Shown here piece by piece: positions 4,713-14,036 of a DNA stretch of 15,526 nt. This stretch comes from Octopus sinensis (Eukaryota). The stretch is from NCBI RefSeq assembly GCF_006345805.1, contig NW_021825449.1, positions 1 through 15,526 of the forward strand, in the 5' to 3' direction. How positions within the stretch are numbered: position 1 is the stretch's first letter; every line of letters starts with the position of its first letter. The notes below the pieces were generated by a model. That model had not been told where the DNA came from. It saw only the letters and a list, made by a program, of their open reading frames with translations, and made no database searches. The translations under genes and the position numbers were made by a program.

Positions 4713-4782
4713 ACCAATTTTACATCAGATAAACACCCACACACACATGTGTGTGTGGGTGTTTATCTGATGTAAAATTGGT
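4713..4782. repeat. Perfect 70-bp palindrome (35-bp arms, no spacer)
   Basis: accaattttacatcagataaacacccacacacaca|tgtgtgtgtgggtgtttatctgatgtaaaattggt. The right arm is the exact reverse complement of the left arm. Confidence 0.97.
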
Positions 4783-4996
4783 TTTGTGGTAGAAAACTTT
4801 GAATAAAGATGGACGGAAGCAATCCAAAGGACAGCAGATCTTAGAGAGAAATAATTGTTCTCTGTAAGACTTGAGAAAGTATTTGAAATTATATTTTTTT
4901 ATATATCGGTTGCTCTTTATCAAATCCTGAATTTTAAAACGCAGTTTCATTGTGGCCGCTCCGAAAGCAAGAAAGCAAAAGAAAAAGACATAAAAA

Positions 4997-5110
4997 GGCC
5001 ATATCACGTTGAATGCACCGGTTCTCGTACGACCACCGAAGTTAAGCAACGTCGAGCCTTGTTAGTATTTGGATGGGTGACCACTTGGGAAACCTAGGTA
5101 CTGTAAGCGT
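4997..5110 (+). pseudogene. 5S rRNA-derived sequence (first ~6 nt missing, several substitutions, no oligo-T terminator)
   Basis: ggccatatcacgttgaatgcaccggttctcgtacgaccaccgaagttaagcaacgtcgagccttgttagtatttggatgggtgaccacttgggaaacctaggtactgtaagc aligns without gaps to metazoan 5S positions 7-120. A-box (agttaagcaacgtc) and C-box (tggatgggtgacc) are recognisable. Confidence 0.93.
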
Positions 5111-5169
5111 CACACAAGCGGTGGTGCATCAGCATGGCCGCAGCTCTGAGCTGAAATCAGAAAAAAAAA
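4997..5169 (+). mobile_element. 5S-headed retroposon (candidate SINE3 or 5S/LINE-tail chimera)
   Basis: The 5S body is followed after a 7-nt linker by gcggtggtgcatcagcatggccgcagctctgagctgaaa and A9. This tail is homologous to the 3' ends of family A SINEs and of the 8248-8306 fragment. Confidence 0.75.
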
Positions 5170-5524
5170 GAGCGCAAACCTCCGCCAAAGCAAAACCAAC
5201 GTCCTCTCAACGATTAGCCAGAGATGATTTTTAAAATGAGAATATCTGAAATAAACTCGACTGCTCTCACAAACGAGAATACTAAAAATGAACCCGACCA
5301 CTCTCAAGAATTAAGTAAGAAAAAAAAAAAACAGGAAAAATGATCCAGAATCGTTGTCCGTTACTAGATCAATCCTAAAATCTAATCAGTTCGTACCAGT
5401 CCCGAGACCAAACTTCCTTGAAAGTTTCATCCGAATCCATCCGGCGGTTCTTGGGGTATCCTGTCCACGGACAAACAAACACGAGTGAAAACAATACCTC
5501 CGCCTTAGCGAAGGCGGAGGTAAT
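5170..5524 (+). mobile_element. Helentron/HINE (DINE-1-like) non-autonomous rolling-circle element
   Basis: Terminal 12-bp hairpin tacctccgcctt-agcg-aaggcggaggta (5495-5522). The same motif cctccgcc sits near the other end (5179-5186) as an asymmetric subterminal inverted repeat. A short (ACAA)n precedes the hairpin, and no TSD is visible. Confidence 0.7.
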
Positions 5525-5695
5525 AATGCAACTTTGAACATGCGAATATTCGACAGTAAACGGTGTTGCGTAATCTCATGTTAGCCCCGATCAATCAAAC
5601 TTATAATAAAAAGCTCACCAACAATGACTATTCTGTTTCTTTTATCTTTCAAGCATGTGTACCAGGTCTACATTACTCAATAGTCTTTTATTTAA

Positions 5696-8186: not shown

Positions 8187-8245
<59 letters not shown>

Positions 8246-8359
8246 AATCCTTAAGTCCTTAATAATGTTTCAGACCGAAGGCTGCGGCCATGCTGGGGCA
8301 CCACCGTTATATATATATATAATATATATATATATACACATACAAACACATGTATATAT

Positions 8360-8413
<54 letters not shown>

Positions 8414-8640
8414 ATATATAATATATATACATATATATATAATGCATACACACGTGCGCGCACATACACACATACACACATATGCGACGAGTTTCTTTCA
8501 CTTTGTCTTTCGAATCCACTCAGGAGGCTTTGGTCAGCTCGGGACTACAGTAACATACACTCGCACAAAATGTCACCCAGTAGCATTGAACCTGGAACCA
8601 TGTGATTGTGAAGCAAACTATTAACCACACAGCCACGCCC
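7913..8640 (-). mobile_element. Old, diverged full-length family A SINE with an expanded internal (TA)n/(CA)n
   Basis: Tail and body at 7913-8130 (ccttgtttcagccactggactacagtcatgctggagcatcgc...gggacaaacac), microsatellite at ~8130-8480, head at 8483-8640 (cgacgagtttctttca...accacacagccacgccc). Confidence 0.82.
8248..8306 (-). mobile_element. Isolated ~60-bp LINE/SINE 3' tail nested in the microsatellite of the old SINE
   Basis: The reverse complement is cggtggtgccccagcatggccgcagccttcggtctgaaacattattaaggacttaagga. It has the shared tail motif but a different stem-loop and a different terminal repeat. Confidence 0.8.
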
Positions 8641-9375
8641 AAATCAAAGAAATGGTTAAAATAGTCTGCATGTTTGAGTATATATCATATGACAAGATCA
8701 GTCATATTCTATATTAAACCTTTTTCTATTTTTCTTTTCACGCCTTTAAGATATGTTCTTAAAGCAGTTTCTTTTCTTGCACTTTGCTCTCTACTAAGTA
8801 TTTATATCAATCTCACCACGACTTACTAATGGAAAGGTTGATCTGCTTGACTTACAATTGGATTAACAAGGAAGTTGTTGAATATACGATGAAATAATCT
8901 CTAGCTTAGTAATGTCATAGATATCATGTGTTCTGTACGAAGTTGAAAGAAAAGTCGATTGCATTTTTTTTTCCAGATTTGTGTATTACACTTACTACTT
9001 TCAAAACTATTCATAATTTTGACTAATGACGCAGCCTGGCATAGGATGACTTACAAAAGCTTATATCGAACATACGAGAAGCGGTATGAATGAATCTTTA
9101 AGGAAAATTTTGGTCTTATAATGGGCTTATCATTTTAATGGTTTTTTTTTTACTTATGTCTTTTCAGTTATGTCAAATAACAAAATTTGTTGATGGACTC
9201 GTCTAAAAAATTTGAAGATGAGTCCAGCACTGCCCTAACTCTCATCAATTTCTTCAAGTATCATTTGAATAAGATAGAAGGGGAGGTGCTGTTTTATGGT
9301 GTGTTTATCGAAAGTTGGATGAGAGTGGCAAAACCAGTGAGGTTGATTGGGTCTACACTGATTATGCATATCCCT

Positions 9376-13895: not shown

Positions 13896-14036
13896 TGCAG
13901 CGTGGAAGGTGTTTATAAGCCATTTAAGAAACACACAAAAACCGTTAGATTCACTTCAACATTTAAATTTAATTTGTCAAAATATTTTCGTCGCTTTGAG
14001 ACCGCGACCTGTTCACTGACAAAACTTCGTGCTGCA
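13896..14036 (-). mobile_element. Short hammerhead-bearing unit (solo Penelope-like pLTR or retrozyme-like monomer); boundaries uncertain
   Basis: Contains the hammerhead below and is bracketed by tgcagc (13896) and gctgca (14031-14036). The PLE link is inferred from the ribozyme architecture only. Confidence 0.45.
13973..14023 (-). ncRNA. Minimal type-I hammerhead ribozyme with a G3:C8 core variant
   Basis: Minus strand: stem I UUUGUCA - core GUGAACA - G - stem II GUCGC/loop GGUCUCAAA/GCGAC - GAAA - AUAU - UU - stem I' UGACAAA. All helices and the core spacing fit, and C3/G8 are swapped as a compensatory pair. Confidence 0.78.

What the first reader, a model, noticed from the sequence alone, without database searches (positions are those of the whole stretch)
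4997..5169. 5S rRNA head fused to a SINE/LINE 3' tail: candidate cephalopod SINE3
Seen: 5S positions 7-120 with recognisable A and C boxes. The T-run terminator is replaced by cacacaa, then a ~45-nt tail (gcggtggtgcatcagcatggccgcag...ctgaaa) homologous to the tails of family A SINEs, then A9. The first T5 downstream is at 5228-5232. Established: 5S-derived SINEs (SINE3) and snRNA/5S-LINE chimeras formed by template switching exist in other animals. Inference: this is either one copy of a 5S-promoter SINE mobilised by the same LINE as family A, or a one-off chimera. I do not know of such a family in cephalopods, but cannot search. It is antisense to the host gene.
Basis: partly seen in the sequence, partly recalled or inferred. 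Interest (0 to 1): 0.8.

Follow-up and report, generated by a model that had tools for sequence, protein, structure and literature searches.

The report
5S rRNA–LINE tail chimeric retrocopy
This is an old retro-copy of a 5S ribosomal RNA transcript welded to the last ~50 bases of an octopus LINE. It is one of many such fusions in this genome that were mostly made independently, so it shows the raw material of SINE birth and not an established 5S-headed SINE family.

Summary
Window 4997-5109 is 5S rRNA positions 7-119 (Rfam 83.5 bits). It is followed by GTCACACA, a ~41-nt two-hairpin tail and CAG(A)9.

The tail is the exact 3' end of a jockey/CR1-like LINE and is shared with tRNA-type SINEs.

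5S+tail units are numerous and dispersed: 1581 first-look candidates, and all 40 scored span the junction. They do not behave as one SINE3 family:
- 77 exact junctions are nearly all different.
- The spacers reproduce the gene-specific 3' trailers of individual 5S genes in the chromosome-4 array, followed in about 60% of cases by T3-T8.
- One trailer class joins three or more tail types, or complete SINE heads.
- The youngest copies are identical to live 5S genes.
- A pre-tRNA (intron, trailer and T-run retained) and a U6-like 3' end are fused at the same tail boundary.

Best reading (0.72): recurrent template switching by the LINE reverse transcriptase from its ~50-nt tail onto nascent Pol III transcripts. 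The window copy is an old, 5'-truncated product, about 8% diverged, with no T-run and no close sibling.

The source gene of its TCACACA trailer was not found.

The scan noted such fusions earlier elsewhere in this genome. No paper describing them in cephalopods turned up; Repbase and Dfam could not be checked.

The parts
4997..5109 (+). 5S rRNA-derived head, 5S positions 7-119. The first 6 nt of 5S are missing or replaced by A-rich sequence. There are 10 differences from the live A-variant gene, at positions 24, 39, 43, 61, 70, 78, 81, 93, 110 and 119.
   Evidence: Rfam hit at 83.5 bits; alignment to this genome's own 5S genes.
5110..5116 (+). 3' trailer TCACACA of the source 5S transcript. 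The oligo-T that follows it in sibling copies is absent here.
   Evidence: The same trailer followed by T0-T7 is seen at many other loci.
5117..5157 (+). LINE 3' tail. Hairpin 1 lies at about 5118-5141 and hairpin 2 at about 5141-5153, followed by GAAAT (consensus GAAAC).
   Evidence: The 35-mer core has 1070 exact genome copies. About 18 of 30 sampled copies are 3' ends of a LINE reading frame. Fold: -21.3 kcal/mol, z -2.96. Hairpin 2 is kept by compensatory changes between tail types.
5158..5169 (+). Terminal CAG(A)9, the A-rich 3' end typical of this LINE's copies (consensus TAGA(A)n).
   Evidence: Comparison with LINE and chimera 3' ends.

Best explanation
The element is a chimeric retrocopy. 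A jockey/CR1-like LINE reverse transcriptase primed at a nicked target, often a TA microsatellite, and copied the ~50-nt two-hairpin 3' tail of a LINE or SINE RNA. At the 5' edge of hairpin 1 it switched template onto the 3' end of a 5S rRNA primary transcript still carrying its gene-specific trailer. It then copied that RNA towards its 5' end; in the window copy it stopped 6 nt short.

The same accident has happened many times in this genome, with transcripts of different 5S genes and also with a pre-tRNA and a U6-like RNA. Most products keep the Pol III terminator between head and tail, so they cannot propagate as SINEs.

The window copy is an old product (about 8% diverged from live 5S genes). 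It lacks the T-run but shows no progeny.

Shown here: the composition, the LINE origin of the tail, the diversity and gene-specificity of the junctions, the orientation bias and the age spread.

Inferred: the template-switch step itself, and the reason for the fixed breakpoint. One possibility is an RNP-protected tail fragment; another is RT pausing after the hairpins.
For: 1. Abundance. 1581 first-look candidates; all 40 scored hits span the junction at 83-89% identity on many chromosomes.
2. Junction diversity. 48 exact junctions and 77 are almost all different, with backward-read controls of 0.
3. Gene-specific trailers. The spacers match private trailers of individual genes in the C4:131.78-131.98 Mb 5S array. 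Examples are ATTCCATTACC, ATTCCATTCC, ATTCCCTTCTG, ATTCCCTTTT, ATTCTATTAC and ATTCTTC (against 19, 27).
4. RNA-type 3' ends. By my hand count of the list, about 48 of the 77 junctions keep T3-T8, shorter than the genes' own T8-T20 runs, as expected for Pol III RNA 3' ends.
5. Free combination. The TCACACA trailer class is joined to ATCA, CCCA and TCCA tail types. In about 14 of 27 cases it is joined to a complete SINE 5' head.
6. Ages. The 5S parts differ from live genes by 0% to 11%. L060 is identical to one live gene variant; L035 has the same Rfam score and, as printed, the same sequence as the major variant.
7. Other Pol III transcripts. An intron-containing pre-tRNA with trailer and T6 is fused at the same tail boundary (L064). 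A U6-like 3' end (GTTCCATATTTTTT) is too.
8. Tail origin. The tail is the 3' end of a LINE whose reading frame ends 17 nt upstream. The best named protein match is 'jockey-like'.
9. Orientation. 77 sense against at most 4 antisense tails next to a 5S end.
10. Insertion as a unit. Whole units are flanked on both sides by (TA)n, and L012 has a 13-nt duplication around the whole unit.
11. No close relative. The window junction is unique within 2 mismatches, and the window copy shares no private mutations with other copies.
Against: - No present-day 5S gene with the window's TCACACA trailer was found. There was none among 52 distinct 5S-flank contexts in the loci fetched, most of them array genes, and no gene-like context among 27 exact TCACACA+TTT hits. 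The source of this class is therefore unknown.
- The tail breakpoint is nearly constant, within about 6 nt. L1-type chimeras have variable LINE lengths, and a constant boundary is also what a SINE family would show.
- The window copy has no internal terminator, so its build is SINE-competent.
- Target-site duplications could not be resolved for the window copy.
- The 1581 count is only a rough first-look number.
- No RNA data were obtained.
Confidence: 0.72

Rival explanations
1. True SINE3 lineage. The TCACACA-type 5S+tail units, or a T-less subset that includes the window copy, descend from one or a few master copies. These masters would be transcribed by Pol III from the 5S internal promoter through the tail and mobilised by the LINE.
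For: The window copy, L002, L005 and L013 all lack the T-run and carry tail type 1. The window copy and L002 share G>A at 5S position 110 (my reading of the alignment). The tail start is constant. No 5S gene with this trailer was found.
Against: The same trailer class carries T0-T7 and three or more tail types, plus whole SINE heads. No junction is shared within 2 mismatches. The mutation pattern is star-like, with no shared private mutations beyond CpG sites. The retrocopies lack the conserved upstream element present at nearly all the array genes seen.
Confidence: 0.15
2. Read-through master in the 5S array. A LINE tail inserted just downstream of a 5S gene, and read-through transcripts (5S + trailer + T-run + tail) were then retrotransposed.
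For: It would explain the gene-specific trailers and the constant tail start.
Against: None of the 5S copies that carry the array's upstream promoter motif has a tail after its terminator. Chimeras carry T3-T6 where the genes have T8-T20. Many different genes and tail types would each need their own insertion.
Confidence: 0.05
3. Adjacency at the DNA level. A tail-only LINE fragment inserted by chance, or by preference for T-runs, next to an existing 5S pseudogene.
For: Tail-only copies exist (6 of 30 sampled), and the LINE favours AT-rich targets.
Against: Orientation is 77 sense against at most 4 antisense. Whole units sit inside single TA microsatellites, and one has a duplication around the whole unit. 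Dispersed 5S copies start at 5S +1 with no promoter, so they are themselves retrocopies that needed a priming tail.
Confidence: 0.03

Closest known systems
U6/L1 and 5S/L1 chimeric retrocopies of mammals (Buzdin et al. 2002/2003, from my own knowledge; catalogue in bioRxiv 10.1101/2025.02.02.635956)
   Same: Both are two-part insertions: a small Pol III RNA lies 5' of the 3' end of a LINE and is made in one event. They arise recurrently and independently and do not self-propagate. In the sense-oriented U6 type, the small RNA's oligo-U end sits at the junction.
   Different: The LINE here is jockey/CR1-like, not L1. The LINE part is a nearly constant ~50-nt tail, not a variable length. The 5S is sense and near full length with its unprocessed trailer; human 5S/L1 chimeras are reported as mostly antisense and truncated (read). 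The first-look count here (1581) exceeds the 253 chimeras catalogued in that study.
SINE3, the 5S rRNA-derived SINEs (Kapitonov & Jurka 2003; HaSE3, CoeSINE5 and SINE-1_Pmo as reviewed in PMC5786205)
   Same: A 5S head carrying the internal promoter region, joined to a tail taken from the partner LINE's 3' end.
   Different: SINE3 families descend from master copies that share one junction and lack an internal terminator. Here the junctions are individual, most keep the terminator, and the youngest heads are identical to live 5S genes.
Stringent LINE/SINE pairs that share a 3' stem-loop (eel UnaL2/UnaSINE1, Kajikawa & Okada 2002; CR1 3' hairpin plus microsatellite; from my own knowledge)
   Same: A short structured 3' tail is shared by a LINE and its SINEs, and it appears to be all that is needed for copying.
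   Different: Recognition of this octopus tail by its LINE protein has not been tested. The fixed template-switch point at the 5' edge of the tail is not, to my knowledge, described for those systems.

Membership tests
SINE3 (5S-derived SINE) | 5' head derived from 5S rRNA, including the internal control region | tested here: met
   Rfam 83.5 bits. 5S positions 7-119 are present. Changes at positions 61, 70, 81 and 93 fall in the box A / IE / box C span. G61 is shared with other copies of the class, and G81 also occurs in live genes.
SINE3 (5S-derived SINE) | 3' tail derived from the 3' end of a partner LINE | tested here: met
   The tail 35-mer has 1070 exact copies. About 18 of 30 sampled copies are LINE 3' ends with an RVT_1 reading frame.
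SINE3 (5S-derived SINE) | Copies descend from master copies: a shared head-tail junction and diagnostic mutations distinct from the 5S genes | tested here: not met
   The 77 junctions are nearly all distinct and carry gene-specific trailers. The window junction is unique within 2 mismatches. No shared private mutations. The youngest heads equal live genes.
SINE3 (5S-derived SINE) | No Pol III terminator between head and tail | tested here: inconclusive
   Met for the window copy: there is no T4 before 5228. Not met for about 60% of the population, which keeps T3-T8 (my hand count).
SINE3 (5S-derived SINE) | The composite is transcribed by Pol III | not testable with these tools
   No RNA run was found. 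The retrocopies lack the upstream element shared by nearly all the array genes seen.
LINE template-switch chimeric retrocopies | Small RNA 5' of a LINE 3' end, in the same orientation, inserted as one unit | tested here: met
   77 sense against at most 4 antisense. Units are flanked by one (TA)n tract, and L012 has a 13-nt duplication around the whole unit. No duplication was resolved for the window copy.
LINE template-switch chimeric retrocopies | The junction lies at the 3' end of the small RNA as transcribed (oligo-U) | tested here: met
   Gene-specific trailers plus T3-T6 in most copies. The window copy has the trailer without the T's.
LINE template-switch chimeric retrocopies | Independent events, with no self-propagation | tested here: met
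   Trailers and tails combine freely, and other Pol III RNAs are captured at the same boundary.
LINE template-switch chimeric retrocopies | Variable length of the LINE part, as in L1 chimeras | tested here: not met
   Breakpoints cluster within about 6 nt at the 5' edge of hairpin 1. 6 of 30 sampled tail copies start there too.

The most novel reading that the evidence does not exclude
Octopod jockey/CR1-like LINEs may run a standing 'SINE nursery'. A ~50-nt tail RNA with a defined 5' end would be routinely joined by template jumping to nascent Pol III transcripts (5S, pre-tRNA, U6). Head-only Pol III units such as the TCACACA-type 5S, which has no visible gene in the array, might then persist as dispersed copies that are re-transcribed and re-acquire a tail at every cycle. 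That would be a SINE-like life cycle without an inherited tail.
Probability: 0.15. Interest if true: 0.7.

Novelty: new member of a known kind. Interest (0 to 1): 0.42.

Why it matters
SINEs are thought to be born when a LINE reverse transcriptase jumps from its own tail onto a Pol III transcript. Intermediates of that step are rarely seen in number. This genome holds a large series of them, of all ages, with the donor gene readable from the trailer. That makes the birth step, the in-vivo Pol III termination sites and the turnover of the 5S array directly measurable. It also warns annotators that 5S+tail hits in octopods should not be collapsed into a single SINE/5S consensus. The window copy itself is an ordinary decayed example.

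Tried and rejected
The array was therefore sampled only through the loci.
- The first antisense control used too short a gap and returned 0 hits. It was repeated with N{20,50}.
- The duplication search gave nothing usable outside microsatellites (observed mean 7.9 against control 6.5).
- Read laying on four DNA runs was swamped by repeats. It could not show an empty site in relatives, because alignments are cut at the masked A-rich stretch 4970-4997. No RNA run was found.
- ARAGORN in bacterial mode called the L064 tRNA as His. My reading of the anticodon loop is Lys(UUU) with an intron, which is an inference.
- The protein atlas gave only generic reverse-transcriptase clusters.
- Literature searches found no cephalopod 5S-derived SINE or chimera report. 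One search was wasted on over-broad terms and one lookup matched 'sinensis' instead of SINE. The octopus genome paper was not held.
- Rejected readings: a single-locus chimera and a single-master SINE family.

Full report
**Observation.** Rfam finds one family in the window, 5S_rRNA at 4991-5106, at 83.5 bits against a gathering score of 38. Aligned to this genome's own 5S genes, the copy runs from 5S position 7 (window 4997) to position 119 (5109), with 10 differences in 113 positions. It continues with TCACACA (5110-5116) and a tail from 5117 to 5157. The tail folds into two hairpins at -21.3 kcal/mol, z -2.96. The unit ends with CAG(A)9 at 5158-5169. The 26-nt tail core recurs at 8282-8307 on the minus strand, where it closes a tRNA-type SINE just after that SINE's internal (TG)n(TA)n tract. 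A 294-nt contig from an independent DNA run matches 4733-5026 without a difference. The one correction is that cacacaa does not replace a terminator: it is a trailer that in sibling copies is followed by the T-run.

**Is it a single locus?** No. A search of the window's own 2.72-Gb assembly with 4985-5175 gave 1581 first-look candidates. All 40 that were scored span the 5S/tail junction at 83-89% identity, on many chromosomes. Thirty copies aligned together show full 5S 5' ends (GCTTACGG...), unrelated flanks and the same tail start.

**Is it one SINE family?** The junctions say no.
- Exact-pattern searches returned 48 junctions and 77 junctions, with zero hits for the backward-read controls. 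Almost every junction is different.
- Between ...CTGTAAGC and the tail lies a spacer of a few recognisable kinds, then a T-run of 0-8, then 1-4 A's and the tail.
- The real 5S genes sit in an array at C4:131.78-131.98 Mb. They share a conserved upstream element (TATAGAATAAATAT...), and each has a private 3' trailer before a long T-run.
- Those private trailers reappear in the dispersed junctions. Examples are ATTCCATTACC, ATTCCATTCC, ATTCCCTTCTG, ATTCCCTTTT, ATTCTATTAC and ATTCTTC. There they are followed by only T3-T6, where the genes have T8-T20.
- That is the signature of Pol III primary transcripts ending in their terminator. It does not fit DNA adjacency or read-through.
- Heads and tails combine freely. 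The TCACACA class to which the window belongs is joined to three tail types (loop ATCA, CCCA or TCCA). In about half of 27 exact hits it is joined instead to the complete 5' head of a tRNA-type SINE.
- The 5S parts differ from live genes by 0% to 11%. L060 is identical to one live gene variant. L035 has the same Rfam score and, as printed, the same sequence as the major variant.
- The window's own junction is unique in the genome within 2 mismatches, and the window copy shares no private mutation with any other copy.

**What is the tail?** Its 35-nt core has 1070 exact copies. In a positional sample of 30 copies:
- About 18 are the 3' ends of a LINE. Its reading frame ends at TAATAA 17 nt upstream, so the LINE continues CAGTGTAGCACAAAACGGC|GGTGC...
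- 6 are tail-only copies that begin exactly at AAC(G)GC.
- 4 are SINE bodies joined to the tail through a microsatellite.
- One is a 5S chimera.
- One is a 95-nt tRNA with an intron-like insert, trailer and T6, fused at the same boundary (L064). I read it as pre-tRNA-Lys(UUU).

Further points on the tail:
- The LINE piece carries an RVT_1 domain. Its best named relative is 'RNA-directed DNA polymerase from mobile element jockey-like' of Octopus bimaculoides. Its YRPISLTS motif suggests the CR1/jockey group, which is my inference.
- Hairpin 2 is preserved between tail types by paired changes, CAGCU...AGCUG against CAGUC...GACUG.
- Among 32 exact T4+tail junctions, the upstream ends include the pre-tRNA, 5S trailers and GTTCCATATTTTTT. 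From memory, the last is the conserved 3' end of U6.

**Controls.** Next to a 5S 3' end the tail lies in the sense orientation 77 times and in the antisense orientation at most 4 times. Many whole units lie inside a single TA microsatellite, and L012 has a 13-nt duplication around the whole unit. For the window copy no duplication could be resolved.

**Mechanism.** The best reading is recurrent template switching. The LINE enzyme copies its ~50-nt recognition tail, then jumps onto the 3' end of a nascent Pol III transcript and copies that. The jump itself is inferred from the anatomy. What remains unexplained is why the breakpoints fall within about 6 nt at the 5' edge of hairpin 1, and why tail-only insertions start there as well. 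A protein-protected tail fragment with a defined 5' end, or pausing of the enzyme after the hairpins, would both fit.

**The window copy.** It is old (about 8% diverged from live genes), 5'-truncated by 6 nt and lacks the T-run. In principle Pol III could therefore read from the head through the tail to the T5 at 5228. It has changes inside the internal control region and lacks the upstream element of the real genes. No progeny were found.

**Main weakness.** No present-day 5S gene with the TCACACA trailer was found. A small true SINE3 lineage, or a dispersed head-only source copy, therefore cannot be excluded for this class. I give those readings about 0.15.

**Comparison with what is known.** The units work like the U6/L1 and 5S/L1 chimeras of mammals, which are recurrent and non-propagating (read). 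They have the ground plan of SINE3. They fail the defining SINE3 feature of descent from masters with a shared junction. They differ from L1 chimeras in the LINE clade, the fixed tail length and the sense-oriented, near-full-length, unprocessed 5S.

No paper in the searchable library describes 5S-derived SINEs or such chimeras in cephalopods. Octopus SINEs are reported there as the tRNA-Core and tRNA-Deu types. Repbase, Dfam and SINEBase could not be consulted.

Earlier notes of this scan recorded many 5S-tail fusions and two pre-tRNA fusions on other pieces of this genome, without settling whether they form a family or are one-offs. One of those notes names the species as Octopus sinensis, which I did not verify.

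**Verdict.** The feature is real. The specific element is ordinary. The population it belongs to is a useful natural record of the step by which SINEs are born. Novelty: a new member of a known kind. Interest: 0.42.

Noticed in passing
window 8240-8650 (minus strand): A tRNA-type SINE ('family A'). It has a head (GGGCGTGGCTGTGTGG...), a body, an internal (TG)n(TA)n tract and then the related tail AACGGTGGTGCCCCAGCATGGCCGCAGCCTTCGGTCTGAAAC, followed by more (TA)n. The microsatellite sits exactly at the tail boundary where 5S and pre-tRNA fusions occur.
   Followed up: partly
window 5170-5545: Another repeat starts right after the A9 run. Many contigs from four DNA runs align from 5169/5170 to about 5330 at roughly 87% identity, while 4786-4947 upstream is single-copy. 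Its identity was not determined. The T5 at 5228-5232 lies inside it.
   Followed up: no
G000:C4:131.78-131.98 Mb (L032-L059); possibly also C4:135.79 Mb: A 5S rDNA array on both strands, with a conserved upstream element (TATAGAATAAATAT(A/C)TTAAAATTTAC), two main gene variants (GAAAAC/GGGAACCC and GAAAGC/GGGAAACC) and gene-specific 3' trailers. Three further 5S hits at C4:135.795-135.797 Mb suggest a second small cluster.
   Followed up: partly
L057 (G000:C1:176744010) and 14 loci listed: 5S plus T-run fused directly to the 5' end of a complete SINE (GGCGGCGAGCTGGCAGAAACG... or AGGCGCAGGAGTGGCTGTGTGG...). This looks like a template jump at the very 5' end of a full-length SINE RNA. Four of the loci share TTTTTATAGGCG.
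   Followed up: partly
G000:C3:81815158-81815192: GTTCCATATTTTTT, which resembles the U6 snRNA 3' end, is joined to the same LINE tail. This would be a U6-tail chimera. The upstream sequence could not be fetched.
   Followed up: no
L061-L090 flanks, L012, L025, L026, L029, L030, L069: This LINE and its passengers are very often flanked by (TA)n, which suggests a preference for TA microsatellites as targets. Many full-length 5S chimeras are preceded by an extra G (GGCTTACGG), which is absent upstream of the array genes.
   Followed up: partly
window 13973-14023: Another first-stage note on this window reports a hammerhead-ribozyme-like motif. The Rfam gathering-threshold scan of the whole window found only 5S.
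   Followed up: no
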